This document shows positions 6,564 through 43,234 of a DNA stretch of 64,000 nucleotides, in pieces. The position numbers were made by a program, and so were the translations under genes. Within the stretch, counting starts at the first letter, position 1; each line of letters starts with the position of its first letter. Under the pieces are notes generated by a model. The model did not search any database. It was given only the letters and a program-made list of their open reading frames with translations, and had not been told where the DNA came from. Location of the stretch: positions 124,001 to 188,000 of IMG/VR virus record IMGVR_UViG_3300023202_000383. One strand, written 5' to 3'.

Positions 6564-6657
6564 CGTCTCGTTGGCTTCCCTTTGCCTTTGGAGGTTAATA
6601 GGGTGTCCAGACCTATCCCAGAAAAGACCGCAAAAGAGAGCCCTTCCGGGCCTTACA

Positions 6658-6729
6658 GACCCCGTAGCTTAATGGGCAAAGCATCGGTTTCCGGAACCGA
6701 CGATGCGGGTTCAATTCTTGCCGGGGTTA
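6658..6729 (+). tRNA. tRNA-Arg(CCG)
   Basis: TCGGT-TTCCGGA-ACCGA anticodon arm; GACCCCG/CGGGGTT acceptor. Confidence 0.88.
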
Positions 6730-7259
6730 TTGATAAACATGTTAGGGATAAATCGGTAGCAATAATAGGAAATAGTAATTCTATATTTAATGGCAATTAT
6801 GGAGATACAATAGATTCTCATGATATAATTATTAGGATTAATAGGGGGCATGAGATAGAAAGCCCTAAATCCCAAGGATCAAAAACTGATATTTTGTCAA
6901 TATCTATCCCAATACCAGAAAAGCTAGTAACACCGATAATGCCTGAACTAGTAATATGGGCCACAAACAAGATTGGCAATATGCCGAAGTATAACAATAT
7001 AGTTATGGTCAGGAATAGTGACAGTGCATGGAAAAAGCTCTTTGACCAAATCGGATCGAGACCATCTACCGGCTTGATCACAATAAATCTGTTTGCTAAT
7101 TATATGAATTGTAAGAACATATCATTATTTGGATTCGATTTTTTTAAAACAAAGACGTTCTATCATACAGATAGGCGAATAAAGATGCCGCATGACGGCA
7201 AATCAGAGGAAGCATTCGTTAGAAAATTGGTTGGTCGGAAAAACCTAATGCTCTATTGA
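6729..7259 (+). CDS. glycosyltransferase family 29 (sialyltransferase)-like protein; start codon uncertain
   Basis: VAIIGNS...IDSHDIIIRIN...GSKTD (L-motif-like) and RPSTGLITI...FGFDFF (S-motif-like); ORF-track 5' part is the tRNA. Confidence 0.7.
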   Translation: MDKHVRDKSVAIIGNSNSIFNGNYGDTIDSHDIIIRINRGHEIESPKSQGSKTDILSISIPIPEKLVTPIMPELVIWATNKIGNMPKYNNIVMVRNSDSAWKKLFDQIGSRPSTGLITINLFANYMNCKNISLFGFDFFKTKTFYHTDRRIKMPHDGKSEEAFVRKLVGRKNLMLY

Positions 7260-7923
7260 ATTCTACCCCACCTGCCAGTTTAAACCATTGTTCCGCTGCA
7301 GGTGTCCATTCCTCTAAAGTAGTATTCTTACTTCTCTTGGTGAGATTTTGTTTTCTCAATGCTTCGTCTACTACAATGCTTGGGTCGATATGTTGAATGC
7401 CGAGAAACTCGACAATTCTGATAACTTCAGACATTGCTGTCGATTCATTTGTGATTGATTCGAATTTACATGGTAAATATTTAGATTCCATCCATCCGAT
7501 ATTCAGTTTTGCATGATTTAATATATAATTACCGCACCGCTTGATTGAATCAAGGTGATTTTTGAATTTACCACCCTGAGTGAGTCGGTGTCTACGCCAT
7601 GACAAAATGCAGTGGCGGAGTTCTCTATGCATAAATATAACTTTGCAATCTGATAATTGATTATGACACTGATATTGCACATGGCCGATACTGAATCCGT
7701 TTTCTGGTATCGCGTCTATTGACTCGCTGAGCGATCGTTTTATGGAACCATATTTTCCTTGCTCTTTTAGTTTGGCCATCTGCTCCAAACTATTGATACC
7801 TTTATTTACAATATATCGATCTTCTCTCACATGATGGCCGGTCCAATTAAGACCTAGTATGTCAAGATACTGGCACATTAGGTATGTACCTGATTTTGGG
7901 ATTGATGTTACGAATGCTTTCAT
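7219..7923 (-). CDS. sulfotransferase-like protein
   Basis: SIPKSGTYLM 5'-PSB-like loop; ATG 7923 overlaps the upstream TGA. Confidence 0.65.
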   Translation of the reverse strand: MKAFVTSIPKSGTYLMCQYLDILGLNWTGHHVREDRYIVNKGINSLEQMAKLKEQGKYGSIKRSLSESIDAIPENGFSIGHVQYQCHNQLSDCKVIFMHRELRHCILSWRRHRLTQGGKFKNHLDSIKRCGNYILNHAKLNIGWMESKYLPCKFESITNESTAMSEVIRIVEFLGIQHIDPSIVVDEALRKQNLTKRSKNTTLEEWTPAAEQWFKLAGGVEFNRALGFSDQPIF

Positions 7924-8537
7924 TTTGTTATCATTGCATTGCCGCATTCTAATGCAGCAAACTTCATGGAATAATCGTTGCTACAGAATTCCATAACTGC
8001 TTTTGTGCAACCTGGAAAATTTCCGCCTTTAGGCCACGGTCCAAAATCATCGATTATTATAATGCCGTGATCAACCATTCTTGGATAAAAGTATTCTAGC
8101 GATTGTTTTGTTGGATGATATAGATCAACATCAATATGAACGAAGCTGTACTTTTCTGTGTCTGATTGTTCAAAGACTTCTGGGATCCAGCCTTTGTGGA
8201 CGCTGATGTTGTCGGCCTCTTTAAGAACCCATTTTAGGTTATCAACTGATGATTTGAATTGGCCTTTTTTGCTTTTTGGGATGCGGTCTTTATCAGACGG
8301 CATGCTAAGGCCTTTAAATGAATCAAATATGTCGAATTGGCAATAATTCAAATAGTTTGATATTAAGTATGATGATAATCCTTTATAGCATCCAGCCTCC
8401 GCTATATTGCCATAGGGACACAAGCGAGCTATCTGGATCATATTGTAAAACCTTCGTCTCCTACGAGACAGATCCGGCATATTAGTCAGAGCGATAGCTC
8501 TGTCATATATTGTATTAAATTCGCTGAAAGGATGCAT
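7920..8537 (-). CDS. TylF/MycF-family O-methyltransferase
   Basis: IAEAGCYKGLS, FDSFKGL, KGWIPEVF, HIDVDLY, IIIIDDFG motifs. Confidence 0.85.
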   Translation of the reverse strand: MHPFSEFNTIYDRAIALTNMPDLSRRRRRFYNMIQIARLCPYGNIAEAGCYKGLSSYLISNYLNYCQFDIFDSFKGLSMPSDKDRIPKSKKGQFKSSVDNLKWVLKEADNISVHKGWIPEVFEQSDTEKYSFVHIDVDLYHPTKQSLEYFYPRMVDHGIIIIDDFGPWPKGGNFPGCTKAVMEFCSNDYSMKFAALECGNAMITK

Positions 8538-8556
8538 ATTTTATTTTTGTGATGAT

Positions 8557-8643
8557 GGTGGGATGGCAGAGCGGCTGAATGCGTTGGTTTTGAAAACCAA
8601 TAACGATTAACTTCGTTCGTGGGTTCGAATCCCACTCCCACCT
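8557..8643 (+). tRNA. tRNA-Ser(TGA)
   Basis: TTGGT-TTTGAAA-ACCAA; long variable arm. Confidence 0.9.
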
Positions 8644-8689
8644 TTTCTGCCCATTCTGCTGCCAAGGTCCTTACGCTCCCCCAAGTGAA

Positions 8690-8764
8690 TTAGCCCCGCT
8701 CGGCCTCGAACCGAGTTTTCCGGATTTAAAGCCCGGCGTGCTAACCAGGTACACTACGGGGCCA
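8690..8764 (-). tRNA. ochre-suppressor-type tRNA, anticodon TTA
   Basis: minus strand (T)GGCCCCG-TA-GTGT-ACCTGGTTA-GCAC-G-CCGGG-CTTTAAA-TCCGG-AAAA-CTCGG-TTCGAGG-CCGAG-CGGGGCT(A)-A. Confidence 0.85.
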
Positions 8765-8804
8765 CTTCCCGGACCAAGGATGACGTCCAGCAGGATGGGT
8801 ATTT

Positions 8805-8892
8805 GGAGCGTCAAGCAGATTGGCGACTGCACTGTTTTCGAACAGCAGCGAGCCTGAACAAGGCCTTGGGGGTTCGATTCCCTCACGCTCCG
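8805..8892 (+). tRNA. tRNA-Ser(CGA)
   Basis: CTGTT-TTCGAAC-AGCAG anticodon arm; long variable arm; G73. Confidence 0.82.
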
Positions 8893-8894
8893 TT

Positions 8895-9263
8895 ATGAAG
8901 TTAAGGCATAAATTACCAAACAGTAGCAAACGACCAACCACTATTAGAGAAGTGCTTGTTGTCACAATCGATAGAAAGCCAAAGACGCTGATAAGCCTAA
9001 TTTCTCAATCTATAGAGGATCCAGATAGAGAGATATTTTGGGTCATAACATATAGTTGGGATGCGTCGAGAGATGCTACATCGAGGCATGCTACATCATA
9101 CCTAACTAGATCTGTATTGGTAGATGCGAATTTGGAGAGATATGGTGCTATTATCAATGTTGGTAGTGATATCAACCCAGAGTATGGTGTTGACAGGACA
9201 ACTGAATTGGAAATAATTCCGACTAAAGAACAAATAATAAAAGCGATAAATAATAAATTTTAG
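8895..9263 (+). CDS. hypothetical protein
   Basis: ATG 3 nt after the tRNA-Ser discriminator, within ORF 8820..9263. Confidence 0.65.
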   Translation: MKLRHKLPNSSKRPTTIREVLVVTIDRKPKTLISLISQSIEDPDREIFWVITYSWDASRDATSRHATSYLTRSVLVDANLERYGAIINVGSDINPEYGVDRTTELEIIPTKEQIIKAINNKF

Positions 9264-9335
9264 CCTCCGTAGCTCAATTGGTAGAGCAGCGTGCTCTTAA
9301 CGCGTTTGTTGTAGGTTCGAGCCCTACCGGGGGTA
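9263..9335 (+). tRNA. tRNA-Lys(CTT)
   Basis: GCGTG-CTCTTAA-CGCGT. Confidence 0.9.
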
Positions 9336-9337
9336 TT

Positions 9338-9415
9338 GGGAGTGTAGCTCAGCTGGCAGAGTTCTCGGCTTTTAACCGAGCGTTTTGGGTTGCAAGCATT
9401 AACGGTGATGCACCT
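9338..9415 (+). pseudogene. tRNA fragments: 5' half of a Lys(TTT) tRNA followed by a second acceptor/D-arm remnant
   Basis: GGGAGTG-TA-GCTC..GAGT-T-CTCGG-CTTTTAA-CCGAG with no T-arm; then GGGTTGC-AA-GCAT-TAACGGTG-ATGC-A. Confidence 0.6.
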
Positions 9416-9488
9416 GGCCTCCTAACTCAATCGGCAGAGTTCTTGACTTTTAATCAAGATGTTCTGGGTTCGAATCCCAGGGAGGCCA
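9416..9488 (+). tRNA. tRNA-Lys(TTT)
   Basis: CTTGA-CTTTTAA-TCAAG; GGCCTCC/GGAGGCC. Confidence 0.9.
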
Positions 9489-9522
9489 TTTAAAGCATAC
9501 TTATGTCATTAAAATATAAGTT

Positions 9523-10257
9523 ATGGACCCAGATAAAATTCTTATTGCGTGGTATCGTAAGAACAAAGAGACTTTGTCTGCCAATGGAATGAAAAGTCTT
9601 GATGATGTTATTGGTTTTATGGGCTGGCCATCAGAAGAGGATTTTCAGCCTTATTTAGAAGATGGCGGAAGCGCACTAAATACATATGAAGAAGATTTGG
9701 GTCTCCCATTGCCAAAAGAAATAATGCAGTATAAGATAAGCAAATGGCTTGGTAGAGAGGTTAAAATCGATCACCCGCTTGTGGTCAATCCAGATAAATG
9801 GCGGGGGATAGAAATGGATTCGCAATTTGATTCCGAAGATCCAATTGAATATAAACAATACTGGTTGCTAGTATACAATTCTGCTGGCCCAGAATTTAAG
9901 AAAAATATGGGATCATATAAAGATGTTACGGGCCGTATCGAATCTCCGGAAGTTCGAGGGAAGCTATATTATACTAGCATAAATGGCGTACCGGTTTCTA
10001 TTGTTGCTGGCGATGACTCTGTTGCATTCTTAATCGACAACGAAAAGATCAAAATATTCGATTATGATGGAAACAGGTTATATAAAGAAACTGGTAGTGA
10101 TCCTGATGACTACCCGAAAGTGATCAGTTGGATATCTGGATATCCAGGCCTCGGGATTAAATTAGATGATTTGAACCAGTTGCACGCCATCCTTGGTAAT
10201 AAATTAGCTAACTTAGTGATTGGCAAAGACGATATAAGTGTGCTCGATTTGCCGTAA
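9523..10257 (+). CDS. hypothetical protein
   Basis: 244-aa ORF with AAATATA motif upstream. Confidence 0.75.
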   Translation: MDPDKILIAWYRKNKETLSANGMKSLDDVIGFMGWPSEEDFQPYLEDGGSALNTYEEDLGLPLPKEIMQYKISKWLGREVKIDHPLVVNPDKWRGIEMDSQFDSEDPIEYKQYWLLVYNSAGPEFKKNMGSYKDVTGRIESPEVRGKLYYTSINGVPVSIVAGDDSVAFLIDNEKIKIFDYDGNRLYKETGSDPDDYPKVISWISGYPGLGIKLDDLNQLHAILGNKLANLVIGKDDISVLDLP

Positions 10258-10267
10258 TTCTTAATAT

Positions 10268-10339
10268 GTGCCTATAGCTCAGTGGCAGAGCGTCACCTTG
10301 CCAAGGTGAATGTCGTGGGTTCAAATCCCACTAGGCACT
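10268..10339 (+). tRNA. tRNA-Gly(GCC)
   Basis: TCACC-TTGCCAA-GGTGA; U73. Confidence 0.92.
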
Positions 10340-10343
10340 TTCT

Positions 10344-10416
10344 GGCCCCGTAGCTCAATGGATTAGAGCAATGCACTACGGATGCAAAGATAGAGGTTCG
10401 AATCCTCTCGGGGCTA
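10344..10416 (+). tRNA. tRNA-Arg(ACG)
   Basis: loop CTACGGA; GGCCCCG/CGGGGCT. Confidence 0.88.
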
Positions 10417-10432
10417 TTTCCAAATATAAAGT

Positions 10433-10594
10433 GTGATATTTAACTCCAAATTTCAATTTTGGTGTGGCGCACTGGCTTTTGTGTTTGGGTTTATTGCAAC
10501 ATCTATATTATCTGAACTGGTTTGGTGTGTTATAGGTGTTGTAAGCCTTATTTGGGGATCGATCTTATATGAACTTAGAAGATGCGGCCAATAG
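10433..10594 (+). CDS. small two-TM membrane protein (53 aa)
   Basis: GTG-start ORF translated by hand; two hydrophobic stretches. Confidence 0.45.
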   Translation: MIFNSKFQFWCGALAFVFGFIATSILSELVWCVIGVVSLIWGSILYELRRCGQ

Positions 10595-10676
10595 GGTATT
10601 TTTCGTCACAGTTGGTGATGTCATAACAACGTGTAAAACCTCAACCTCATAGAGTGCAATAGCTCGGGAGAAAACA

Positions 10677-11429
10677 ATGTCTGAAAAGAAGAATCCACGT
10701 CTGAACCAGATCATCGCGGTGCTGACCGCCCGCAAGAACCAGTCCCAAAAGAGACTGACTGATCTGTATAAAATGGTCCAGAGACCCGATGCCTTTAACG
10801 GCATGAGCAAGGTCTACACTCCTCGCGATGAAGATGGGGTCAAGTTCCCGACTGACTCGAAGCGTGTCCAGTTTCGTGCTAAGGATGTGTTTGATCGTGC
10901 CGAAGAGATCCTTACTGATTTCTTCGATCTAGCACTCACCCAGGATTCTGGCAACCAAGTGGCTAAGGCTGATGTGGTTGTTGGTGGCGAGACGATCGCT
11001 ACTGATGTTCCTGTCTCGACGCTGCTTTTCTTTGAGAAGCAGCTGACCGACATGAGAACTTTGATCACTAACGTTCCTACTCTCGATCCCGCCCACGAAT
11101 GGGATTTCGATGACAACTCTGGGCTGTACCGGACCAAGGACGAGATCATCAGTACCAAGACGCAGAAGGTCGCCAAGCCGATCGTTCTGCATCCGCCCAC
11201 CAAGGAACACCCGGCCCAGACCGAAATGGTGACCGAAGATCAGGTCGTTGGCGACTGGCATACGACCTACCTGTCCGGTGCTATCAGCCAGAGACGCAGA
11301 GATCAGCTTCTGCAGCGTGTCGATAAGCTGATCGATGCCGTCAAGACGGCTCGCGAGGAAGCCAACGCGATCGAAGTCGAACAACGCAAGGTCGGCAACA
11401 AGCTTATGGCCTTCCTGTTCTCCGAATAA
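10677..11429 (+). CDS. conserved helical protein of unknown function (LNQIIA...LLFFEKQL...HPAQ...AREEAN family)
   Basis: motifs I recall from a widespread uncharacterised bacterial/phage family; visibly more GC-rich than its flanks. Confidence 0.8.
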   Translation: MSEKKNPRLNQIIAVLTARKNQSQKRLTDLYKMVQRPDAFNGMSKVYTPRDEDGVKFPTDSKRVQFRAKDVFDRAEEILTDFFDLALTQDSGNQVAKADVVVGGETIATDVPVSTLLFFEKQLTDMRTLITNVPTLDPAHEWDFDDNSGLYRTKDEIISTKTQKVAKPIVLHPPTKEHPAQTEMVTEDQVVGDWHTTYLSGAISQRRRDQLLQRVDKLIDAVKTAREEANAIEVEQRKVGNKLMAFLFSE

Positions 11430-11433
11430 CTAT

Positions 11434-11898
11434 CAAACCCCTCCCCCTAGGATGGGGGAGGGGCTCCCATAGCTGGAGCCAAACTTAGACTTAAGCTCAA
11501 GTTAAATAAAAGCGTGACAGTGTGTGGTTCGAATCCCGCCCCCGGCATTCAAACTAACCCTAAGCCGGGGTAGCCCAATGGCAGAGGCAGCGCGAATAAA
11601 AGTCAAGTTATTGCTCCCAAGCTCAAGCGTGCTGTTCATCGTCTCGAACTCCAACCCCTGGATGCCTGGTGCTGGTTCGAATCCGGCCCTCCCCTTTCTG
11701 GTTTGAAGCACGCGAAAACATCGGGGAGGTAGCTCAAGGGCAGAGCAAGGTATATGAAGCTAAGGGAAGGATTAAACGGAAATGTGGCGATGAAGTGAGC
11801 AACAGGCCAGCGCGGATACAAAGAACTATCTCTTGAAAAGATAGTGGACTTGTAATCCACTCCGCCCCCGTAGCAGGGTATGCTACGGGGGCTTTTTA
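11434..11898 (+). ncRNA. structured RNA with two circularly permuted tRNA-like modules (Y RNA/YrlA-like topology)
   Basis: T-arm, then 3' acceptor strand, loop, 5' acceptor strand and D-arm, twice (11522-11589 and 11671-11747); perfect 7-bp acceptor helices; ends in a terminator. Confidence 0.75.
11864..11898 (+). terminator. intrinsic terminator
   Basis: GCCCCCGTAGCA/TGCTACGGGGGC 12-bp stem plus T-run. Confidence 0.85.
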
Positions 11899-12031
11899 TA
11901 AAACAATCGGCAGAAATGCCGTTGCGATAACCGGTTCCAGGCTCCAAAGGTTGGAGCAAAAACTAGGGATTGCGCACTAATCCCGCCTCTTACTGGTGCC
12001 GATTTGCCCGTCTCCACCCGAGCGGGCAAAT

Positions 12032-15156: not shown

Positions 15157-15230
15157 GGCCCTGTATCCCAACTGGCAGAGGAATGACGCTTAAAACGTCA
15201 GAGTTGGCGGTTCGAATCCGCCCAGGGCTA
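15157..15230 (+). tRNA. tRNA-Leu(TAA), short variable loop
   Basis: TGACG-CTTAAAA-CGTCA; variable region only GAGTT. Confidence 0.85.
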
Positions 15231-15232
15231 TT

Positions 15233-15433
15233 ATGCTTGACAAGGATGGCCTTTATTCTGTTGACTTGCCATATGCTTGTTATGGCATTGTGATTGAGAA
15301 TGGTGTTGTTATAGAAGCGGCTAATATAGCGGGATGGATGACGGGAAAGCGTGCTGAGGATGTCGAAAGATGGTTGATCAAAAAGAACGCGAAAATGATC
15401 GGTCCGCTTGAGCATCATTTGCCGAATTCATAA
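15233..15433 (+). CDS. hypothetical protein
   Basis: ATG 3 nt after the tRNA discriminator. Confidence 0.6.
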   Translation: MLDKDGLYSVDLPYACYGIVIENGVVIEAANIAGWMTGKRAEDVERWLIKKNAKMIGPLEHHLPNS

Positions 15434-16053
15434 CCAAAATATTTTATGTCTTTCTTGAACACTTTGGCGACTATATCTTTGGTTTTGTCTGTATAATGCT
15501 CCCAGTATGGTTTTCTTGGTCTGCTTGACTTATTCAGATGCGGTATCTTGTGCTTGCCAAGGCCAATTCTGTCCAATACTTCATTTGTGTCGTGTTCAAA
15601 ATTTTCGAATCTTCCTATGAAATCCATTGCAACATTTCCGTTGTGATCGGTTATCCAATCTAATTGAAGCCTATGGTCCCAATTAGAGACATATTCTTCA
15701 AACGGCATGTTTTTGGTTGAATATGGCATGCCATCGAACATGTCGTCCTTTTTATAAAAATAGTGCGACACGGCCCTGTCCCAGGGATTTCTGACAAACG
15801 CGAATTTGAAATAATCATCTAGGTCTATATTGCACCTATCTACATACTCTCTTATTGTCCAATGGCCACCGGTCCAATTTTTAAGTGCCTCTTTCGATTT
15901 TTTAGTCTTTTGTGGATAAAGATTGGCTATGTCTTCATTAGAAATGTCATCTAATACATCTAGGTCGTGGGTATTAACCAGGATGCATTTTAAACTTATG
16001 CCCCCAGTTTTTGGTATCCTAACGCCCAGCCACTTGTGCTCGGAATTCATCAT
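15415..16053 (-). CDS. sulfotransferase family 2 protein
   Basis: VRIPKTGG, FAFVRNPWDRAVSHY, DFIGRFEN. Confidence 0.88.
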   Translation of the reverse strand: MMNSEHKWLGVRIPKTGGISLKCILVNTHDLDVLDDISNEDIANLYPQKTKKSKEALKNWTGGHWTIREYVDRCNIDLDDYFKFAFVRNPWDRAVSHYFYKKDDMFDGMPYSTKNMPFEEYVSNWDHRLQLDWITDHNGNVAMDFIGRFENFEHDTNEVLDRIGLGKHKIPHLNKSSRPRKPYWEHYTDKTKDIVAKVFKKDIKYFGYEFGK

Positions 16054-16212
16054 GATAATTAAATACTGATATGGGACGATTAGACACTGAATTTATATCT
16101 TAAGTCATTAACTGCAGCAGTTGATGATGGTGCTGTACGCATAGGTCGGTGAGCATAGAGCTAACCGAGGATAAAATGTAATAGATAAATCCATTGATAA
16201 ATGGCTTAATAC

Positions 16213-16284
16213 GCCCTCGTAGCTCAGCGGAAGAGCAGCTGCCTTCTAAGCAGCAGGCCGCAGGTTCGAATCCTGCCGGGGGTA
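16213..16284 (+). tRNA. tRNA-Arg(TCT)
   Basis: GCTGC-CTTCTAA-GCAGC. Confidence 0.92.
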
Positions 16285-16286
16285 TT

Positions 16287-16360
16287 GTGACTGGAGCTCG
16301 GTCTGGTAGAGCACCTGATTGTGGTTCAGGGGGTCGCGGGTTCAAATCCCGTCAGTCACC
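16287..16360 (+). tRNA. tRNA-His(GTG)
   Basis: CCTGA-TTGTGGT-TCAGG; C73; base at -1 is T. Confidence 0.9.
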
Positions 16361-16381
16361 TTTACAACAAATATTCTATGG

Positions 16382-17278
16382 ATGTCAAGATATAGACCAA
16401 AAGTATATTTATTAAATGACACGAGCCGAGAACATGTCGGTTCAAAAGCTGCATCATATGTCATAAAGTCAGCGATCCGTAAGAACTACAGATTATATGC
16501 TAAGCATTTTACAAACACTCCGGTTGATTATGATATATTAAAAGCATCAAATATTGTAGTTATCAATGGCGAAGGAACTATGCATCATGATACAAGCAGG
16601 TCTATAATTTTAATGACGGCTATTAGACGAGCAATTAAGATGAACAAGCAAGTTCATCTCGTTAATACCGTGTGGCAAGATATGCACAGAAAATGGACTC
16701 GCATACTAAATAAAGTTGATAGCATAGTTGTAAGAGAGCCGAGAAGCAAGGCCGCATTGGAAGACATCGGAGTCAATAATGTCGAGATTTACCCAGACAT
16801 TTGTGTTGGGTTGAAAGCTAAGAAAGTAAAACCACAAATAAACTTTAGAGGCAAAGTCGTCGTGGGAGATAGCGTTAGAAAATTCAACGACATGCCACTA
16901 AAGGACGATAGAGTGTTTAGAAGGACGCCAAATTACAATATCCCGCGTGACAATTGGGCGCATTTTATAGCAGTGTTAAAGACTATAGGCGTATATGTAA
17001 CTGGTAGGCATCACGGGATATATGCCTGTTGTGCTGCTAAGACGCCGTTTGTGGCGTTTAAATCCAACACGCACAAAATGGAGGGACTTCTTGAATGGGC
17101 TGGATCATCCATCCCAATTTTAGACAACCCAAAAGATGCGCCATCAGCTATAAGATGGGCAAAGGACAACCAAGAAGAATATGATAAGCTCTTCAAATGG
17201 ATGAGAAGTCTACAAAAATGGCCAGGGTTTGATGATACTCGAGCACGACGCAATAATAATTCCGGAAGCGGCGGTTGA
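16382..17278 (+). CDS. polysaccharide pyruvyltransferase-family protein
   Basis: HVGS, VINGEGTMHH, VVREPRS, YPDI, VTGRHHG, SNTHKMEGLL. Confidence 0.8.
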   Translation: MSRYRPKVYLLNDTSREHVGSKAASYVIKSAIRKNYRLYAKHFTNTPVDYDILKASNIVVINGEGTMHHDTSRSIILMTAIRRAIKMNKQVHLVNTVWQDMHRKWTRILNKVDSIVVREPRSKAALEDIGVNNVEIYPDICVGLKAKKVKPQINFRGKVVVGDSVRKFNDMPLKDDRVFRRTPNYNIPRDNWAHFIAVLKTIGVYVTGRHHGIYACCAAKTPFVAFKSNTHKMEGLLEWAGSSIPILDNPKDAPSAIRWAKDNQEEYDKLFKWMRSLQKWPGFDDTRARRNNNSGSGG

Positions 17279-19994: not shown

Positions 19995-20067
19995 CCGCAT
20001 TTAGCTCAATTTGGTAGAGCGCTCGCTTTGGGGCGAGAGGTTGCAAGTTCAAATCTTGCAATGCGGA
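19995..20067 (+). tRNA. tRNA-Pro(TGG) with an anticodon arm one base short (atypical or pseudo)
   Basis: CCGCATT/AATGCGG; CTCGC-TTTGGG-GCGAG gives a 6-nt loop. Confidence 0.7.
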
Positions 20068-20102: not shown

Positions 20103-21020
20103 ATGAAATTCAATGAAATCGACTGGGATCTAATACAATCAGATTATGATTCGGGCCTTACTCTTAGGCAGGTTGGCAAGAGACATAAAATTGGCAATTC
20201 TAGTATCCATAAAGCACAAAAATCAGGACTTCTTAAGACTACGCGGAAGCGATCGTTATCAGAAGAGCATAGAAAAAAGCTTTCTGATAGTATGAAAAAA
20301 GCTGGTATAAGACCGCCCACAACTGTCAAGAGAGAAATTTCAAGCACTAAAGCATGTACTAAATGTACATGCTTGAAACCTATTAATCAATTCCATAAAA
20401 AAGATGGAGCATATGATGGTAGGCAATCAATATGCAAATCGTGCCGCAATATTCATGGTAGAAAATATATGTGCAAGCCGCATATAAACAAAAAACTCAA
20501 GAAACGAAAAGAAGAAATAAAATACAGAAATCAGAGATATATTAAAGAATATTTGTCGATGCATTCATGCAAGTGTGGTGTCGATGACATCAGACTTCTT
20601 GAATTCCACCATCTTAAAAATAAAAAATATGAAGTCCATCAAATGGTGTGGCACAAGTTAGAATCCATAGATAAAGAAATCGCAAAATGTGTTGTTTTGT
20701 GTGTTAATTGTCATAGAAGAGAAACAAATAAAGATAACCCTAGAGAGAATCAGAAGCATCGCAGGGCCATAAAATACAAATTAATAGAAGAAATTCATGG
20801 TACTAAATGTGTGGAGTGTGGGCTTGACGATAAGATAATTATGGATTTAAACCATATCGACCCAACGACCAAATTATTCAATATTGGCGGGTGGTCTGCG
20901 GGCGATACTGATGTATTGATTAAAGAGATAAAGAAATGTGAGCTTATCTGCCCTAATTGTCATCGTCTCAAAACTATTACACAGTCCGACAATTACCTTC
21001 ACAGGATAAAGGAGGCCTAA
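20103..21020 (+). CDS. HNH homing endonuclease with HTH and two tandem HNH domains
   Basis: CKCG...LEFHHL...CVVLCVNCHRRET and CVECG...LNHID...CELICPNCHRLKT. Confidence 0.85.
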   Translation: MKFNEIDWDLIQSDYDSGLTLRQVGKRHKIGNSSIHKAQKSGLLKTTRKRSLSEEHRKKLSDSMKKAGIRPPTTVKREISSTKACTKCTCLKPINQFHKKDGAYDGRQSICKSCRNIHGRKYMCKPHINKKLKKRKEEIKYRNQRYIKEYLSMHSCKCGVDDIRLLEFHHLKNKKYEVHQMVWHKLESIDKEIAKCVVLCVNCHRRETNKDNPRENQKHRRAIKYKLIEEIHGTKCVECGLDDKIIMDLNHIDPTTKLFNIGGWSAGDTDVLIKEIKKCELICPNCHRLKTITQSDNYLHRIKEA

Positions 21021-21021: not shown

Positions 21022-21794
21022 ATGGCCAGGAAACCAAGAATACCGGTTAAGAACAGGGGGCGGCTTTGACTCCGCTAAGAATGGTGGAGTAAGGGGGTGT
21101 CTTTGAAAATGCCACTGAAATTATCGTCGAAATCCAATTTGGCGAAGGTGGCGATGATAGCAAGTTGTTTGTGGACGACCTGTTATCTGCTTACTTGAAA
21201 TATGCCAAGTCGCTCGGTTTTAAGTCCGATCTGATATTCTCAGATAACGGGCATGCTACAATTAAAATCATTGGTAACAATGTTTGGAAGGCTTTTAGAT
21301 ATGAGCCTGGTAAACATTGTGTTCAGCGTATCCCACCAACAGAGAGCAAGGGTAGAGCGCAGACTTCTATTGTTTCTGTGGCTGTGTTGCCGATACCGCC
21401 CAAGATAGGCACTAAGCTTAAATCGAGTGATCTCAAAATTGAGAGGGTTAACCTCGGTGGAAAGGGCGGACAGCACCAGAATAAGACTCTATCTGGTTGC
21501 AGAATGACTCATATTCCAACTGGCCTTAAAGCAACCATCAATGGTAGAGATTACCATAGCAATGAGCGGGAAGCTAAGAGGATACTGGCTGCTAGAGTTC
21601 AGGAGCTTAAACAATCTAAAGCCAATGCTAATTACTCCGCAAAAAGAGTTGAGCAACTTGGGGGCGGAGGCAGGAGCGATAAGGTGAGAACTTACAACTT
21701 CATTAAATCTAGGGTTGTAGACCATAATCTTGGCACTAAGACCAGGAACATCAAGCAAGTGATGAAGGGCAACTTTGAGCTGTTGTTGAAATAA
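21022..21794 (+). CDS. class I peptide-chain release factor (RF1-like PxT, GGQ; domain 1 largely absent) expressed through two +1 frameshifts
   Basis: AGGAGG SD and ATG 21022; CTT-TGA at 21064-69 and 21101-06; then EIIVEIQFGEGGDD, HCVQRIPPTE, GGKGGQHQNKT, THIPTG, RSDKVRTYNF; predicted 256 aa. Confidence 0.85.
21055..21070 (+). promoter_or_regulatory. prfB-type +1 programmed frameshift cassette 1
   Basis: AGGGGG-CGG-CTT-TGA-C, same architecture as E. coli prfB AGGGGG-TAT-CTT-TGA-C. Confidence 0.88.
21092..21107 (+). promoter_or_regulatory. prfB-type +1 programmed frameshift cassette 2
   Basis: AGGGGG-TGT-CTT-TGA-A, in the +1 frame of cassette 1; its own +1 frame is the RF ORF. Confidence 0.88.
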
Positions 21795-26098: not shown

Positions 26099-26701
26099 AT
26101 GAGAATATTAATTGCTATGGTCGTGTTGTTGGTGTCGTCTGCTGTTCTAGCAGACAATTTAACTGATTCAGAACGTAAAGAAAAAGCCGATGTTGTGCGT
26201 TCTGAATTGGCGCATAATCAAATGCAGAGGCGAATGATAATTGAGAGAGCCAAGATGCTCAACTCTGCTATGGTTATGCTGCGTAAAGAACGCCCTGATG
26301 CCAGTGACGAAGACAAGAAAGAAATCGACAAGAGAATTGATCGCCTAAAGCTTGAGCTGCAATCTCTTAGAATAGAGTCTTTGAGGTTGTCGCATTCTAG
26401 AATGCGACTAATCCATGAGCAAAATCGAGATCGTGCAAGAGAAAAAGAAAAGCCGCCAGTCTTCAAAATGAGGACTAGGTATAAGATTAAGAACAAGAGA
26501 TTTGTGCCAATTCCGCCACATATTGCTGCTACAAGTTACTACTTACGTGACCCACGAACTGGCCAGTATTATTATGTCAATATGCATGATGCTGGGTCTG
26601 CAACGCCTGGACTAAGGCACGCTCCTAGGCAGCCGAAGGTTCTTAAGTATGATTATGAGAGATATCACAAATATAATCCAGTCGAATCTAAAAGTAAGTG
26701 A
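26099..26701 (+). CDS. secreted coiled-coil protein (signal peptide)
   Basis: MRILIAMVVLLVSSAVLA-D signal-like N-terminus. Confidence 0.7.
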   Translation: MRILIAMVVLLVSSAVLADNLTDSERKEKADVVRSELAHNQMQRRMIIERAKMLNSAMVMLRKERPDASDEDKKEIDKRIDRLKLELQSLRIESLRLSHSRMRLIHEQNRDRAREKEKPPVFKMRTRYKIKNKRFVPIPPHIAATSYYLRDPRTGQYYYVNMHDAGSATPGLRHAPRQPKVLKYDYERYHKYNPVESKSK

Positions 26702-27276
26702 TATCAAGCATATATAAATGCATATTTGTGCACATCCCGCGAACGGGCGGCACCAGTATAGAGAAGCAGCTTAATCCTTCTCTTAGGGATGGCGTAAAGA
26801 GCGGTCATTCTAAACACATGACCGCTAAGCAGATTTATAGTTTACATCCTGATGCGTGGGACAAGTACTTCAAATTCTCATTTGTTAGAAACCCATGGGA
26901 CAGAATGGTATCTATGTACTACCAAGGATTCTATAATAATCCTAAAATTCCAACTAGATATTATGGGCATAAATCAGGACATTCTTTAGAAGAATTTATT
27001 GAATGGTGGAAGCCCACCAAATGGGAAAAGCTGCTGCAAGTAGAATATTTTGACCATAGTGAGATGGACTTTATTGGTAGGTTTGAGAGACGCAGTAGGG
27101 ATTTGACATACATCTCTGATCAGATAGGTCTAGATTTGACAAGCAGCATAAAACTTCGTCCTAGTCGCGGCAGGCCGAAGGATTATACGAAGCTTTATAC
27201 TAGGCAAGCAATTAAAACGGTAGAAAACAGATTCGCAGAAGATATTGAAGCGTTTGGATATAAATTTGGAAAATAA
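26698..27276 (+). CDS. sulfotransferase family 2 protein
   Basis: FVHIPRTGGTSI, FSFVRNPWDRMVSMY, DFIGRFE. Confidence 0.9.
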   Translation: MISSIYKCIFVHIPRTGGTSIEKQLNPSLRDGVKSGHSKHMTAKQIYSLHPDAWDKYFKFSFVRNPWDRMVSMYYQGFYNNPKIPTRYYGHKSGHSLEEFIEWWKPTKWEKLLQVEYFDHSEMDFIGRFERRSRDLTYISDQIGLDLTSSIKLRPSRGRPKDYTKLYTRQAIKTVENRFAEDIEAFGYKFGK

Positions 27277-30023: not shown

Positions 30024-30108
30024 GCACGGTTGGCCGAGTGGTTGAAGGCGTTGGCCTGCAAAGCCAATGGGCGGAAGCTCCACGTGGGTTCGAATCCCTC
30101 ACCGTGCT
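30024..30108 (+). tRNA. tRNA-Cys(GCA) with a long variable arm
   Basis: TTGGC-CTGCAAA-GCCAA; U73; 16-nt variable region. Confidence 0.85.
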
Positions 30109-30126: not shown

Positions 30127-30492
30127 ATGAATAAAATAACTTTTAATCAATTCATTCCTGGCAAAGAGACTCTGGTACATATAAATGTTGTTCGTGTAGT
30201 GTCTATGAATGAAGTTGGCGACATAGAGGAAGATATCGCCAATCCTTCAAAATCTGTATTTCTTGAATTAACCGTACGTAATAATGCTAATATTAGTTTT
30301 ACTATCATAACTGATGGTGACAGTTGGGCCAATGTAGCAAAAGTTTTGGCCGATATTTACAGCTATGATAGTCTTGGTGCTGACATGAAGTATAGAATTG
30401 TAGACATGTCTGACTTAATTCAACTAACCACGGCAGACCAAGACAAAATAAAATCTAATATCCAAAAATTCTTGGAAGATTTAGACATATGA
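30127..30492 (+). CDS. hypothetical protein
   Basis: internal ATG after the tRNA. Confidence 0.65.
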   Translation: MNKITFNQFIPGKETLVHINVVRVVSMNEVGDIEEDIANPSKSVFLELTVRNNANISFTIITDGDSWANVAKVLADIYSYDSLGADMKYRIVDMSDLIQLTTADQDKIKSNIQKFLEDLDI

Positions 30493-31067
30493 GATCGATA
30501 ATCCATGTTGGTGCACATAGAGGTCAGGAAGCCAAGAAATATCATAATTCTGGGTCGCAAGTTGTGTGGGTCGAGGCAATACCGTGGATCTTCTTAGACC
30601 TCCAGGAGAAAATTAAAAAATATAAAAATCAAGTTGCCATAAATGCATTGGTGTCAGACAAGCATGATTCTGAATATAACTTTAAAATATCAAATAATAG
30701 AGATGGTGTAAGTTCATCTATATATGAATTCGGTAAAGATGGAAATGAAATGTTCGACATCTCTATGTGCAGTTCTATATTGTTGCGTAGCACTACATTA
30801 AAAATGCTGTTTGATAATTATAGGTTGCATAAAAGAAATATTGAGCATATGGTTCTGGATGTTCAAGGTGCAGAACTGTTGGTATTAAAAGGTGCCGGTT
30901 CTCTGCTAGGTCAGTTCAAGATTATTAAAACCGAAGTGAGTACGGTTGAAGTTTACAAAGATGGCGTTCAATGGCCAGAATTGAGACAGTTCTTGAACAA
31001 TAAGGGATTCAAGGAAGTTGCGGCACCATCTAAAGAACATTGCGATGTAGTTTTTAAACGCGTATAA
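30489..31067 (+). CDS. FkbM-family methyltransferase
   Basis: IIHVGAHRGQE, VEAIP, LDVQGAELLVLKG, TEVS. Confidence 0.9.
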   Translation: MRSIIHVGAHRGQEAKKYHNSGSQVVWVEAIPWIFLDLQEKIKKYKNQVAINALVSDKHDSEYNFKISNNRDGVSSSIYEFGKDGNEMFDISMCSSILLRSTTLKMLFDNYRLHKRNIEHMVLDVQGAELLVLKGAGSLLGQFKIIKTEVSTVEVYKDGVQWPELRQFLNNKGFKEVAAPSKEHCDVVFKRV

Positions 31068-37150: not shown

Positions 37151-37269
37151 TACCTCGTGTTTATGAATTAAATTTCTTGTCGGATTGACCAGTGTATCTT
37201 TGACAAATGTTTTGCAAGCTCATGCCACATGTTGGATAGCGCTGGTCACAACAGACTGTCATTTACATT

Positions 37270-40574: not shown

Positions 40575-41606
40575 GTGAATAAAATTGTATTTAGACATCA
40601 TTTATCGCCTGGAGATATAGTGTGCATGACTGCGGCGATCCGCGATCTGCATATGAACCATAGCGGTAAGTTTGAGACTGGCGTTGATACAACTGCAATG
40701 CAGGTTTGGCAGGGCAATCCATATATTACCAAATTCAACCATAAAGATATAGTAAAGCTAGACAACGACAAAGATGATAAATATAGAGCTACCCACGACG
40801 AAATAAAAGAAATATGGGATTCTGGCAAGATCCCATCAGTGAAGCTTCATTATGATTTGATCCATCAATCGAACACTTGCACTGGCCATTTTATAGATGG
40901 GTTTTGCGATGGCATAGAAGATCTTCTAAATGTTAGAATAAAGAACCGCAAATGTTATGGTGACATATATATATCTGATGTCGAGCGGTCATGGGTGTCT
41001 CAAGTCCAAGAAGTGACTGAATCTGACACCCATTTCTGGATAGTTGTGAATGGCGGAAAATACGACTTCACATGCAAATGGTGGGATCCATTTAGGATGC
41101 AGAAGGTCGTAAACGCTATGAGACACATAACATTTGTGCAAGTTGGTGAAAAAGGGCACAACCATCATCCATTGGTTGGCCCAAATGTGATAGATTTTAT
41201 AGGCAAAACAGACATTAGGCAGCTGATAAGATTAGTGTATCATAGTAGTGGAGCCATATGTCCGGTTACATTTATGATGCATCTGGCGGCTGCTGTGCCA
41301 GTAAGGCCAGAAAAGACGTATGCTAGAAAAACAAGGCCTTGTGTTGTTATTGCTGGGGGCAGAGAGCCCTCCAGATGGGAAGCATATACCAATCATGCAT
41401 ATTTGCACAAATGTGGTACACTAGCATGCTGCGACAATGGTGGGTGTTGGAAGTCTAGAGTTGTTCCTTTAGGTGACGAAGATGAGAAAGATAAGGATCT
41501 CTGTTTAGATCCAGTTACCACAGAAAATGGTATAATCGTCCCTAAATGTATGAAAATGATAACAGTGTCTGATGTTATAGAAGCTATTGAAAGCTATTTA
41601 CCATAG
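40575..41606 (+). CDS. glycosyltransferase family 9 (heptosyltransferase)-like
   Basis: SPGDIVCMTAAIRDLH; TCKWW; DFIGKTDIRQLIRLVYHS; HLAAA. Confidence 0.75.
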   Translation: MNKIVFRHHLSPGDIVCMTAAIRDLHMNHSGKFETGVDTTAMQVWQGNPYITKFNHKDIVKLDNDKDDKYRATHDEIKEIWDSGKIPSVKLHYDLIHQSNTCTGHFIDGFCDGIEDLLNVRIKNRKCYGDIYISDVERSWVSQVQEVTESDTHFWIVVNGGKYDFTCKWWDPFRMQKVVNAMRHITFVQVGEKGHNHHPLVGPNVIDFIGKTDIRQLIRLVYHSSGAICPVTFMMHLAAAVPVRPEKTYARKTRPCVVIAGGREPSRWEAYTNHAYLHKCGTLACCDNGGCWKSRVVPLGDEDEKDKDLCLDPVTTENGIIVPKCMKMITVSDVIEAIESYLP

Positions 41607-41614
41607 GAGTTGTA

Positions 41615-43234
41615 ATGCCGAAGGATATCATTTTTGATGAGTCAGTTAGAAGCAAGATCCAAGACGGTCTCAACAAGCTGGCCCAAGCAGTCAGAGTGAC
41701 TTTGGGGCCGACTGGCCGTGTTGTCATGATTGAAAGGGATTTTGGAGACCCTATCATAACGAAGGATGGGGTCACTGTAGCCAAACACATAGATCTTGAA
41801 GATAAGCTGTCGAATATGGCTGCAATGATGGTGCGTCAGGCGGCGTCCAAAACTGCCTCTGAGGCTGGAGATGGCACAACGACTGCTACTATTTATACTG
41901 AAGCAATATATGGTGCTGGTATAAAGAGTGTTCTGGCTGGGGCTAATCCTCAAGATCTCAAAAATGGGATGAATAAAGCTGTACAGGCTATCGTCCATCA
42001 ACTTGAGAGAATGGCTAAGCCTATAACCAGCACAGAAGAGATAAAGCAGGTCGCTGCGTGCAGCGCCAATCAAGACAATATTATAGGGTCTATAATTGCC
42101 GACGCTATGGATAAAGTCGGCAAAGATGGCGTTGTCACAATAGAAGAAGGCAAGACGTTGGATACTTCGGTATCTGTTGTCGATGGTTATCAATTCGATA
42201 AAGGATATATGAGCCAACATTTTGTGACCAATAAGGAAAAGATGGTCGCTGAATACGAGGAGCCCTATATACTGTTGAGCGAAGATCGAATCGACGATCT
42301 TAAAAGCCTCTTGGGGATGCTTGAGCTCGCAATCAAGAAGGGCCAAAGGCCGATAGTTATCATAGCCGATGATTTTGATGATACGGTCATGACGACTTTG
42401 ACTGTCAATCACTTAAGGGGGTCGTTGAAAGTGTTGGCTATAAAGTCCCCCGGCTTTGGCGACAGACGTAAGCAGATGATGGAAGATATAGCAACAATAA
42501 CTGGTGCGAAGGTCTTCTCCAAGGCATCTGGCGTGACAATGAAGAATCCTAGCATAGACGCTTTTGGGTCGTGCGAAAAGATCACTGCGTCTGATGATTC
42601 CACTATTATAGTGGAAGGTGCTGGCGATGAATCTGAAATAGAAGAAAGAATAAATCAGATCAGGACTCAGCTCGAATCTGTTGGTGGCGATTTTGATAAA
42701 GAAAAGCTCCAAGAAAGGCTTTCTAAGCTGATAGGCGGCGTTGCTAGAATTGTCGTCGGCGGTGCTACAGAAGTTGAAGTTAGAGAAAAGAAAGATCGCA
42801 TCGACGACGCTTTACATGCTTGCAAAGCTGCTGTTCAAGAAGGAATATTGCCTGGCGGTGGTGTTGCTGTTCTACGAGCTTTCCAATCTGTTTCTCTGGA
42901 GTTTGATTCTAGAGATGAGGAAATGGGAGTTGGCATAATATTCAAAGCCATAGAAGATCCAATAAGGCAAATCGCCAAGAATACTGGCAAGGATGATGGT
43001 GCTGTTCTCGCTAAAGTGATGGAAAGCAGCGATGCCAACTTTGGGTTCAATGCTGCCAAGGATTCCTTCGAAAATCTGATCGACGCTGGCATAATCGTCC
43101 CAGCCAAGGTTGAGAGGATTGCATTGCAAAATGCCGCATCTATAGCTGCCTTACTTCTTGCTACGGATTGCATGATATCTATAATTCCTGAAGTCGCACC
43201 CGCACAGCCTGACGGGATATATCCAGGGATGTAG
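41615..43234 (+). CDS. groEL: chaperonin GroEL
   Basis: TLGPTGR, ITKDGVTVAK, GDGTTTAT, PGFGDRRK, GGGVA. Confidence 0.97.
   Translation: MPKDIIFDESVRSKIQDGLNKLAQAVRVTLGPTGRVVMIERDFGDPIITKDGVTVAKHIDLEDKLSNMAAMMVRQAASKTASEAGDGTTTATIYTEAIYGAGIKSVLAGANPQDLKNGMNKAVQAIVHQLERMAKPITSTEEIKQVAACSANQDNIIGSIIADAMDKVGKDGVVTIEEGKTLDTSVSVVDGYQFDKGYMSQHFVTNKEKMVAEYEEPYILLSEDRIDDLKSLLGMLELAIKKGQRPIVIIADDFDDTVMTTLTVNHLRGSLKVLAIKSPGFGDRRKQMMEDIATITGAKVFSKASGVTMKNPSIDAFGSCEKITASDDSTIIVEGAGDESEIEERINQIRTQLESVGGDFDKEKLQERLSKLIGGVARIVVGGATEVEVREKKDRIDDALHACKAAVQEGILPGGGVAVLRAFQSVSLEFDSRDEEMGVGIIFKAIEDPIRQIAKNTGKDDGAVLAKVMESSDANFGFNAAKDSFENLIDAGIIVPAKVERIALQNAASIAALLLATDCMISIIPEVAPAQPDGIYPGM

What the first reader, a model, noticed from the sequence alone, without database searches (positions are those of the whole stretch)
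8690..8764. Ochre-suppressor tRNA (anticodon UUA) with a possible 8-bp acceptor stem, inverted within the tRNA cluster
Seen: a full cloverleaf with anticodon loop CU-UUA-AA. It is the only minus-strand tRNA in the window. The acceptor can extend to 8 bp (TGGCCCCG/CGGGGCTA), and only in that register does it show the N73-TT trailer shared by all other tRNAs here. Known: UUA decodes UAA, and UAG by wobble. U1-A72 is a Gln-type feature. Seen: many genes here end in TAA, so the code is not reassigned. Inference: this is a conditional suppressor, or it is charged unusually.
Basis: partly seen in the sequence, partly recalled or inferred. Interest (0 to 1): 0.75.

Follow-up and report, generated by a model that had tools for sequence, protein, structure and literature searches.

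The report
Ochre suppressor tRNA in huge phage
A well-formed tRNA gene that reads the stop codon UAA lies backwards inside the tRNA array of a 257-kb phage that uses the ordinary genetic code; such suppressor tRNAs are already known in large phages, but this phage and its relatives also carry their own release-factor gene, and that pairing is worth testing.

Summary
Window 8763..8691 (-) is a canonical tRNA (Rfam 55.9 bits) with anticodon UUA. It is the only minus-strand tRNA of the 26 in the window. Contigs of three DNA runs agree with it at every base, so TTA is not an assembly error.

The window lies in a 256.5-kb myovirus-like phage genome assembled from a metagenome, with 35 tRNAs. The genome uses the standard code throughout: TAA ends 128 of 320 ORFs. 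I found no read-through signal and no recoded block.

The 8-bp acceptor and the N-TT trailer argument are correct as sequence facts. They are not diagnostic, because 13 other tRNAs here also have a -1 T that could pair with N73. In the normal register the top pair is G1.U72, which 11 of the 26 window tRNAs share.

With the anticodon masked, the body groups with Lys, Gln and Glu tRNAs, and its D arm and 4-nt variable loop are most Gln-like. My best reading is a natural supB-type ochre suppressor. Expression and charging are untested.

The context is the more interesting part. The same tRNA array encodes an RF1-type release factor without domain 1, made through two prfB-like +1 frameshift sites. 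Ten of 11 related phage records with this factor carry a CUA or UUA suppressor tRNA.

Verdict: a new member of a known kind.

The parts
8691..8763 (-). tRNA with anticodon UUA in the canonical 7-bp register: G1.U72, A73, 4-nt variable loop AAAA, D arm GUGU/GCAC
   Evidence: Rfam RF00005 55.9 bits, model 1-71; ARAGORN
8727..8729 (-). Anticodon U34 U35 A36. It reads TAA on the + strand.
   Evidence: Sequence read; identical in contigs of three DNA runs
8764..8764 (-). -1 T that can pair with A73 (8691) to give an 8-bp acceptor
   Evidence: ARAGORN drawing. The same potential exists in 13 other tRNAs of the genome.
8688..8690 (-). 3' trailer A-TT: one extra A (8690) between A73 and the TT that follows N73 directly in all 34 other tRNAs
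   Evidence: Flank table
7920..8537 (-). TylF-like methyltransferase gene, first ORF downstream on the same strand. tRNA-Ser(UGA) on the + strand (8557-8643) lies between it and the UUA tRNA.
   Evidence: Pfam PF05711 E 4e-13, PF13578
7219..7947 (-). Sulfotransferase gene, second ORF of the minus-strand unit. A terminator-like hairpin lies at 7200-7186 (-).
   Evidence: Pfam PF00685; terminator scan
21022..21794 (+). Context: an RF1-type release factor without domain 1. It starts at ATG 21022 after the SD AAGGAGG and has two +1 frameshift sites, CTT TGA at 21064-21069 and 21101-21106. It carries a PPT tripeptide and GGQ.
   Evidence: Pfam PCRF+RF-1; NCBIfam RF1 198 bits; reading of the three frames; homologues

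Best explanation
This is a genuine phage tRNA gene with anticodon UUA, that is, an ochre suppressor. Its body belongs to the Gln/Lys/Glu group of tRNAs and is most like the tRNA-Gln of related huge phages. Shown: the cloverleaf is intact, the anticodon is fixed in the sampled population, and the genome uses the standard code with TAA as its commonest stop. Inferred: it is transcribed from the minus strand, probably on the transcript that serves the methyltransferase and sulfotransferase genes downstream. It is then cut out by RNase P and RNase Z and given CCA, like the other CCA-less tRNAs here. The host's GlnRS or LysRS, which rely mainly on U35, would charge it. It would insert Gln or Lys at UAA, and by wobble at UAG, at low efficiency, in competition with RF1 and RF2 and with the phage's own RF1-type factor. 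It is therefore a general weak read-through agent, like E. coli supB, and not the decoder of a reassigned codon.
For: The tRNA scores 55.9 bits with all conserved positions and no broken stem pair. The sequence is identical in three runs. The code is standard: 91% of the genome is covered by ORFs, with stops TAA 128, TGA 122 and TAG 70. Treating TAA, TAG or TGA as sense gives no gain in coding density overall or in any 16-kb block. Coding-stop-coding junctions are no commoner at TAA (19/128) than at TAG (11/70) or TGA (23/122). The anticodon-masked profile scores are Lys -0.0, Gln -1.3, Glu -2.9 and next best -11.9. The D-arm signature occurs in 9/20 Gln tRNAs against 7/220 others, and a 4-nt variable loop in 15/20 Gln tRNAs. 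The genome has no ordinary type-I tRNA-Gln. Real genes lie downstream on the same strand, with only 19 nt between the first ATG and the next + strand tRNA, so minus-strand transcription must start further upstream. Suppressor tRNAs recur in related phages and are published for the standard-code jumbo phages phiKp24 and XacN1.
Against: There is no expression or charging data; no RNA run was listed. No promoter-like site lies just upstream on the minus strand, and no shared upstream motif was found. No sequence homologue turned up in viral, metagenome or genome collections, so conservation of this particular tRNA cannot be shown. The raw nearest neighbours are a mixed set of isotypes. A73 fits Lys and Glu better than Gln, whose tRNAs mostly have G73 in relatives. 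A strong ochre suppressor would harm a phage in which 40% of genes end in TAA.
Confidence: 0.55

Rival explanations
1. It is one half of a phage toolkit for setting termination at UAA and UAG. The suppressor tRNA and the phage's RF1-type factor oppose each other. The factor's synthesis is gated by two +1 frameshift sites at UGA. Because the two genes lie on opposite strands, they could be expressed at different times and so shift the balance between read-through and release during infection.
For: The RF1-type gene lies 12.4 kb away in the same tRNA array. Ten of 11 well-sampled phage records with this factor carry a CUA or UUA tRNA. None of 5 tRNA-bearing phages without an RF-1 domain has a canonical one, although phiKp24 has an aberrant one. 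The frameshift leader is conserved in 38 of 48 loci, and some members use TAG or TAA at the shift site.
Against: The control set is small, unrelated and made of smaller genomes, and the records with the factor are kin, so the counts are not independent. Suppressor and RF genes are often far apart. The relatives' CUA tRNAs are not homologues of this UUA tRNA. No mechanism has been tested.
Confidence: 0.3
2. It is a silent or decaying gene: a Gln/Lys/Glu-type tRNA copy that was inverted, lost its promoter and took a neutral anticodon change. It does nothing.
For: It is the only inverted tRNA in the array and has no promoter-like site upstream. It has an odd trailer with one extra A. No homologue was found.
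Against: No stem pair is broken and all conserved loop bases are kept. Its Rfam score lies within the range of the other tRNAs, 48-74 bits. The minus strand must be transcribed here for the two downstream genes.
Confidence: 0.2
3. It is a special tRNA with a true 8-bp acceptor and 5-bp T stem, 13 bp in all as in bacterial tRNA-Sec. It would therefore bind EF-Tu poorly or be handled by a dedicated factor or enzyme.
For: T8764:A8691 can pair, and only then does the universal N-TT trailer fit.
Against: Thirteen other ordinary tRNAs here have the same -1 T:N73 potential. The long variable arm, 6-bp D stem and UCA anticodon of tRNA-Sec are absent. No SelB-like factor or synthetase gene was seen among the array's ORFs. 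By general knowledge, RNase P measures 12 bp and prefers U at -1.
Confidence: 0.12
4. It decodes specific in-frame TAA codons in phage genes, either as programmed read-through or as the start of a code change.
For: Published work proposes that suppressor tRNAs are acquired before recoding. Nineteen coding-TAA-coding junctions exist.
Against: The junction rate is the same as for TAG and TGA, and most junctions have a start codon within 6 codons of the stop. No density gain appears with TAA as sense. No Pfam domain is split across the five best pairs.
Confidence: 0.05

Closest known systems
E. coli supB (tRNA-Gln with UUG changed to UUA) and laboratory ochre-suppressor mutants of phage T4 tRNA-Gln (from my own knowledge; reviewed by Eggertsson and Soll 1988, listed as ref. 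46 of PMC8386662)
   Same: A type-I tRNA of the Gln group with anticodon UUA. It would read UAA and UAG weakly in an organism that keeps the standard code.
   Different: Those are mutants selected in the laboratory. This one is fixed in a wild phage population, has A73 and G1.U72, sits inverted in its array, and has untested charging.
tRNA-Sup-TTA of Klebsiella jumbo phage phiKp24 (PMC8386662)
   Same: A UUA-anticodon tRNA in a jumbo phage with the standard code, lying near a DUF7873 gene.
   Different: The phiKp24 gene folds poorly, with acceptor mismatches and an odd 85-nt form. It is not a sequence relative. That phage has no RF-1 domain gene.
CUA suppressor tRNAs of Xanthomonas jumbo phage XacN1 (PMC5852040)
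   Same: Suppressor tRNAs inside a large tRNA array of a standard-code phage, with no target genes found by in-silico read-through.
   Different: They are amber, not ochre.
Suppressor tRNAs of stop-codon-recoded phages (bioRxiv 10.1101/2021.08.26.457843)
   Same: A phage-borne suppressor tRNA, sometimes together with a phage release factor.
   Different: Those phages reassign TAG or TGA, show low coding density in the standard code, and carry the release factor that does not read the reassigned codon. Here nothing is reassigned, and the factor is RF1-type, so it reads the same codons as the suppressor.
Bacterial tRNA-Sec (8/5 acceptor/T-stem) and tRNA-His (G-1:C73)
   Same: An eighth acceptor pair formed with the -1 base is possible.
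   Different: It has no long arm, no 6-bp D stem and no UCA or GUG anticodon. The eighth pair is a weak U:A that many other tRNAs here could also form.

Membership tests
tRNA (Rfam RF00005) | Cloverleaf and conserved loop bases scoring above the gathering threshold | tested here: met
   55.9 bits against 29, full model 1-71
Nonsense suppressor tRNA | Anticodon complementary to a stop codon in a standard 7-nt loop | tested here: met
   Loop CUUUAAA with anticodon UUA; identical in three runs
Nonsense suppressor tRNA | Expressed, aminoacylated and active in read-through | not testable with these tools
   No RNA run was listed. Only DNA contigs were laid.
Suppressor tRNA of a recoded (alternative-code) phage | In-frame stop codons in genes, and low coding density under the standard code that is restored when the stop is read as sense | tested here: not met
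   Density is 0.854 under the standard code and 0.856 with TAA as sense, and no block improves. Junction rates are equal for the three stops.
tRNA-Gln | Body features of tRNA-Gln in related phages: D arm YR-GUGU-A..RCAY and a 4-nt variable loop | tested here: met
   The D-arm signature is in 9/20 Gln tRNAs against 7/220 others, and the 4-nt loop in 15/20 Gln tRNAs. The profile ranks Gln second of 18 isotypes, within 1.3 bits of Lys.
tRNA-Gln | Weak U1-A72 or A1-U72 pair and G73 | tested here: inconclusive
   G1.U72 in the usual register, U:A only in the 8-bp register, and A73. Two of 20 related Gln tRNAs also have A73.
tRNA-Gln | Anticodon YUG | tested here: not met
   The anticodon is UUA.
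tRNA-Sec-like 8/5 tRNA | 8-bp acceptor in the mature RNA | not testable with these tools
   The pairing is possible, but the ends of the mature RNA are unknown.
tRNA-Sec-like 8/5 tRNA | Long variable arm, 6-bp D stem, UCA anticodon | tested here: not met
   4-nt variable loop, 4-bp D stem, UUA

The most novel reading that the evidence does not exclude
A clade of huge phages that use the standard code carries a two-part kit for termination at RF1's codons. One part is an RF1-type release factor without domain 1, whose synthesis needs one or two prfB-like +1 frameshifts at a CTT-stop site. The other is a suppressor tRNA for UAG, or for UAA and UAG. The window's inverted UUA tRNA would be this phage's version of the second part. 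The phage would then control the balance of read-through and release at UAA and UAG, on host or phage messages, independently of host RF1.
Probability: 0.3. Interest if true: 0.8.

Novelty: new member of a known kind. Interest (0 to 1): 0.5.

Why it matters
Suppressor tRNAs in phages are usually explained by stop-codon reassignment. Here a clean ochre suppressor sits in a phage where TAA is the commonest stop, so that explanation fails. Ochre suppressors are also the kind that cells tolerate least. The phage and its relatives carry a release factor for the same codons, apparently autoregulated by frameshifting. If the two work together, this would be a viral way to retune translation termination. 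It would also supply a natural tRNA and release-factor pair for study or engineering.

Tried and rejected
- **Close relatives.** megablast of window 8000-12000 against phage records found nothing. Single-protein scans of viral contigs with the two neighbouring proteins also found nothing.
- **Homologues of the tRNA by DNA pattern.** Two exact anticodon-arm patterns in viral contigs gave 0 hits. A pattern of D arm plus anticodon stem gave 0 hits in metagenome and genome contigs. A loops-only pattern gave 87 metagenome hits, none of which is a tRNA. An anticodon-free loops pattern gave 0 hits in genomes.
- **DUF7873 as a partner.** The DUF7873 gene lies next to phiKp24's Sup-TTA. In four other phages DUF7873 sits in or beside tRNA arrays that have no UUA tRNA, so the link is to tRNA arrays in general. 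I rejected it as a specific partner.
- **Orthology with relatives' CUA suppressors.** Pairwise identity of 0.51-0.71 is no higher than to unrelated isotypes. Rejected.
- **An in-frame TAA in the RF gene read by this tRNA.** Homologues show that the leader works by frameshift, not read-through. Rejected.
- **Promoter evidence.** Neither the consensus scan nor a k-mer search upstream of the tRNAs found a motif.
- **Inverted repeats around the minus-strand block.** Only tRNA-to-tRNA similarity appeared.
- **Records and data that could not be reached.** No RNA runs were listed. The 1988 suppressor review is not held in the library.

Full report
**The object**

ARAGORN finds 26 tRNA genes between window 5258 and 30108. 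Twenty-five are on the + strand. The one at 8690-8764 is on the - strand and has anticodon tta. Rfam's tRNA model matches 8691-8763 (-) over its whole length at 55.9 bits against a gathering score of 29. The other tRNAs here score 48 to 74 bits, and a permissive scan finds no plus-strand tRNA at this place.

In the usual register the acceptor stem is GGCCCCG/CGGGGCU, with G1.U72 and discriminator A73. The D stem is GUGU/GCAC and the anticodon stem is CCGGG/UCCGG. The anticodon loop is CUUUAAA, the variable loop is the 4-nt AAAA, and the T arm is CUCGG-UUCGAGG-CCGAG. No stem pair is broken. U8, A14, G18 G19, U33, A37, U54 U55 C56 and A58 are all present.

**Is TTA real?**

The window is bases 124001-188000 of a single 256,507-bp contig with 41% G+C. 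Three DNA runs of one metagenome study hold the region. Contigs from all three cover 8690-8764 without any difference, while they do show differences elsewhere in the 5.9 kb laid. Two of the runs may be the source of the assembly, so this is not fully independent support. It does rule out a one-off assembly error. No RNA run was listed, so expression is untested.

**What genome is this?**

Tail sheath, baseplate wedge, UvsX-like recombinase, SbcC-like nuclease and several HNH endonucleases mark it as a large myovirus-type phage. The best tail-sheath matches among deposited phages are only 30-40% identical. It has 35 tRNAs in two clusters.

**Genetic code**

Greedy ORF calling under code 11 covers 91% of the genome. 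The stops are TAA 128, TGA 122 and TAG 70. Reading TAA, TAG or TGA as sense changes coverage by ORFs of at least 100 aa from 0.854 to 0.856, 0.867 and 0.866. No 16-kb block stands out apart from the tRNA-dense one, which is low under every code.

Places where coding-like sequence continues in frame across a stop number 19 for TAA, 11 for TAG and 23 for TGA. That is 15%, 16% and 19% of the genes with each stop. Most have a start codon within six codons of the stop, as adjacent genes do. The five best in-frame pairs show no Pfam domain split across the stop. The genome is therefore not recoded, and I found no gene that needs this tRNA.

**The 8-bp acceptor and the trailer**

T8764 can pair with A8691. 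All 34 other tRNAs lack CCA and have TT directly after N73, whereas this one has A73-A-TT. Two points weaken the inference.

- Fourteen of the 35 tRNAs, this one included, have a -1 T that could pair with an A73 or G73. The other 13 are ordinary tRNAs.
- G1.U72 followed by A73-TT occurs in 11 of the 26 window tRNAs. These include Leu(UAG), Glu(CUC), Arg(CCG, ACG, UCU, CCU), Lys(CUU), Leu(UAA, CAA) and one Met. It is house style, not a mark of identity.

The extra A remains unexplained. Whether the mature RNA has 7 or 8 acceptor pairs depends on where RNase P and RNase Z cut, which DNA cannot show. From general knowledge, RNase P measures the 12-bp acceptor/T stack and favours U at -1. I therefore put the 8-bp form at roughly one in eight to one in four.

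**Which amino acid?**

I collected 241 distinct type-I tRNAs from this genome and from related or comparison phage loci. I masked the anticodons, aligned them and scored this tRNA against a profile of each isotype. Lys (-0.0), Gln (-1.3) and Glu (-2.9) stand well apart from the next best, Met at -11.9. These are the three isotypes whose anticodons differ from UUA only at position 36.

The D arm pattern YR-GUGU-A...RCAY occurs in 9 of 20 Gln tRNAs and in 7 of 220 others, none of them among the 16 Lys tRNAs. A 4-nt variable loop occurs in 15/20 Gln, 8/12 Glu and 4/16 Lys tRNAs. One Gln(CUG) tRNA of a relative has almost the same anticodon stem and an AAAU variable loop. The genome has no ordinary tRNA-Gln, only an 88-nt form with a long extra arm.

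Two things count against Gln. Most related Gln tRNAs have G73, although two have A73. Raw nearest neighbours are a mixture of isotypes at 0.67-0.71 identity, so there is no clear orthologue.

By established genetics (my own knowledge), GlnRS and LysRS both lean on U35 and are the enzymes that charge UUA- and CUA-anticodon tRNAs in E. coli. supB is exactly tRNA-Gln with UUG changed to UUA. My estimate is Gln about 40%, Lys about 25%, Glu about 15% and other about 20%.

**Expression context**

Downstream on the minus strand lie a TylF-like methyltransferase gene (8537..7920) and a sulfotransferase gene (7947..7219), followed by a terminator-like hairpin at 7200-7186. Only 19 nt separate the methyltransferase ATG from the + strand tRNA-Ser(UGA) gene. 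The promoter for these genes must therefore lie further upstream, at or beyond the UUA tRNA or in the 46-nt spacer before it. Co-transcription of the tRNA as a leader is plausible but unproven. No sigma-70-like site lies in the right place, and no shared motif was found upstream of the tRNAs.

**Relatives of the tRNA**

Five pattern scans of public collections gave no homologue.

**A release factor in the same array**

Window 21165-21794 carries the PCRF and RF-1 domains. Its best NCBIfam match is RF1, at 198 bits over model positions 121-334 of 347, against 117 bits for RF2 and 49 for PrfH. It has the RF1 tripeptide as PPT within QRIPPTESKGR, it has GGQ, and it lacks domain 1.

Reading the three frames shows the following layout.

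- An ATG at 21022 follows a perfect AAGGAGG.
- A 15-codon leader ends in CTT TGA C, preceded by AGGGGG CGG.
- A 12-codon stretch in the +1 frame ends in CTT TGA A, preceded by AGGGGG TGT.
- The next +1 frame opens with the conserved start of RF domain 2.

From memory, the E. coli prfB site is AGGGGG UAU CUU UGA C.

The protein has 662 homologues at E of 1e-10 or better. They are 205-250 aa long and sit on contigs of up to 477 kb, with GGQ invariant and PxT kept. In 38 of 48 loci examined, a CTT-stop site in the -1 frame, behind a short ATG leader, sits at the start of the RF domain. Four loci have two such sites in tandem. The stop is usually TGA, but it is TAG in seven loci and TAA in two. 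My literature searches found no description of this.

**Suppressors travel with the factor**

Records that carry the factor and were sampled beyond the gene's own flanks almost all hold a suppressor tRNA. The window genome has UUA, and two records have one CUA each. A 527-kb record has a UUA tRNA with an adjacent 86-nt CUA call. A 532-kb record has three CUA tRNAs. Three further records have one or two CUA tRNAs each. Two more have a CUA tRNA within 10 kb of the RF gene. One 572-kb record gave none by a limited pattern search. That makes 10 of 11.

The sampled parts of these relatives look standard-coded, and TAG serves as a stop in them. Five tRNA-bearing phages used as comparison have no RF-1 domain. 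They also have no canonical CUA or UUA tRNA by the same pattern-plus-ARAGORN route. phiKp24's published Sup-TTA is a poorly folding 85-nt gene.

The control is small and unmatched, and the records with the factor are related to one another. I treat this as a lead, not a result. The relatives' CUA tRNAs are not sequence relatives of the window's UUA tRNA.

**Comparison with what is known**

Suppressor tRNAs in standard-code jumbo phages are already published. phiKp24 has a TTA one. XacN1 has two CUA ones, and in-silico read-through found no targets for them. Suppressor tRNAs, sometimes with a release factor, are well described in recoded phages. There the factor is the one that does not read the reassigned codon. 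The window's tRNA is a cleaner example of the first group, and it works like supB. It fails the test for a recoded-phage suppressor.

**Verdict**

It is a new member of a known kind. The interest lies mainly in the unexplained presence of an ochre suppressor in a TAA-rich standard-code phage, and in its company with a frameshift-gated RF1-type factor.

Noticed in passing
window 21022-21794 (+): An RF1-type release factor without domain 1 (PPT tripeptide, GGQ) lies inside the tRNA array. Its reading frame needs two consecutive prfB-like +1 frameshifts, at AGGGGG-CGG-CTT TGA C (21064-21069) and AGGGGG-TGT-CTT TGA A (21101-21106), after a 15-codon leader that starts at ATG 21022 behind AAGGAGG.
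   Followed up: yes
L017-L067 (RF gene at about 10001 in most loci): This is a large family of 205-250-aa RF1-like genes on huge-phage contigs (662 hits). In 38 of 48 loci a CTT-stop +1 shift site sits behind a short ATG leader. The stop is mostly TGA, but TAG in seven loci and TAA in two, and four loci have tandem sites. I found no description of this in the papers searched.
   Followed up: partly
L029 755-831; L032 14612-14689; L070 5921-5992; L071 12892-12967; L163 2265-2425; L170 6393-6540; L176, L182, L192, L193: Amber (CUA) or ochre (UUA) suppressor tRNAs occur in 10 of 11 RF1-like-bearing phage records, which look standard-coded. Five RF-less tRNA-bearing phages have no canonical one. 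The control is small and unmatched.
   Followed up: partly
window 10677-11429 (+): A DUF7873 protein (E 1e-95) is encoded here at 53% G+C, among neighbours at 35-39%. Its homologues sit inside or beside tRNA arrays in Gordonia, Arthrobacter, Vibrio and Klebsiella phages. In phiKp24 the homologue lies 250 bp from that phage's Sup-TTA. Its function is unknown.
   Followed up: partly
window 30024-30108; genome 198221-198305 (-) and 205225-205312 (-): tRNA-Cys(GCA), tRNA-Trp(CCA) and tRNA-Gln(UUG) are 85-88 nt long with a long extra arm, yet they keep the discriminators expected for their isotypes (U73, G73, G73). Long-arm Cys, Thr, Ile and Asn tRNAs also occur in relatives.
   Followed up: no
window 15157-15230 (+): tRNA-Leu(UAA) is only 74 nt long and has no long variable arm. 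Short Leu tRNAs also occur in Gordonia and Arthrobacter phages and in relatives (L013, L014, L025).
   Followed up: no
all 35 tRNAs of the genome: No tRNA has an encoded CCA, and 34 of 35 have TT directly after N73. Eleven of the 26 window tRNAs have G1.U72 with A73. This probably reflects a shared 3'-processing signal.
   Followed up: partly
window 9345-9414 (+): A remnant of a tRNA-Lys(UUU) lies between the two Lys tRNA genes. It keeps the D arm and anticodon arm but has a broken T arm.
   Followed up: no
window 19995-20067 (+): ARAGORN's 'tRNA-???' reads as a second tRNA-Pro(UGG) with loop UUUGGGG. It scores 62.9 bits in Rfam.
   Followed up: no
window 6582-8537, 15415-17278, 26698-27276, 30489-31067: Sulfotransferase, TylF- and FkbM-type methyltransferase, GT29 sialyltransferase-like and pyruvyl transferase genes are interspersed among the tRNAs. 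The RF-bearing relatives carry the same kinds of genes, which suggests phage-encoded glycan modification.
   Followed up: no
window 34340-37219 (-), 41591-43234 (+), 20103-21020 (+): Three other genes were noted: a class II ribonucleotide reductase with an intein, a GroEL-type chaperonin, and a 305-aa HTH and Cys-rich HNH-like ORF directly upstream of the RF gene.
   Followed up: no
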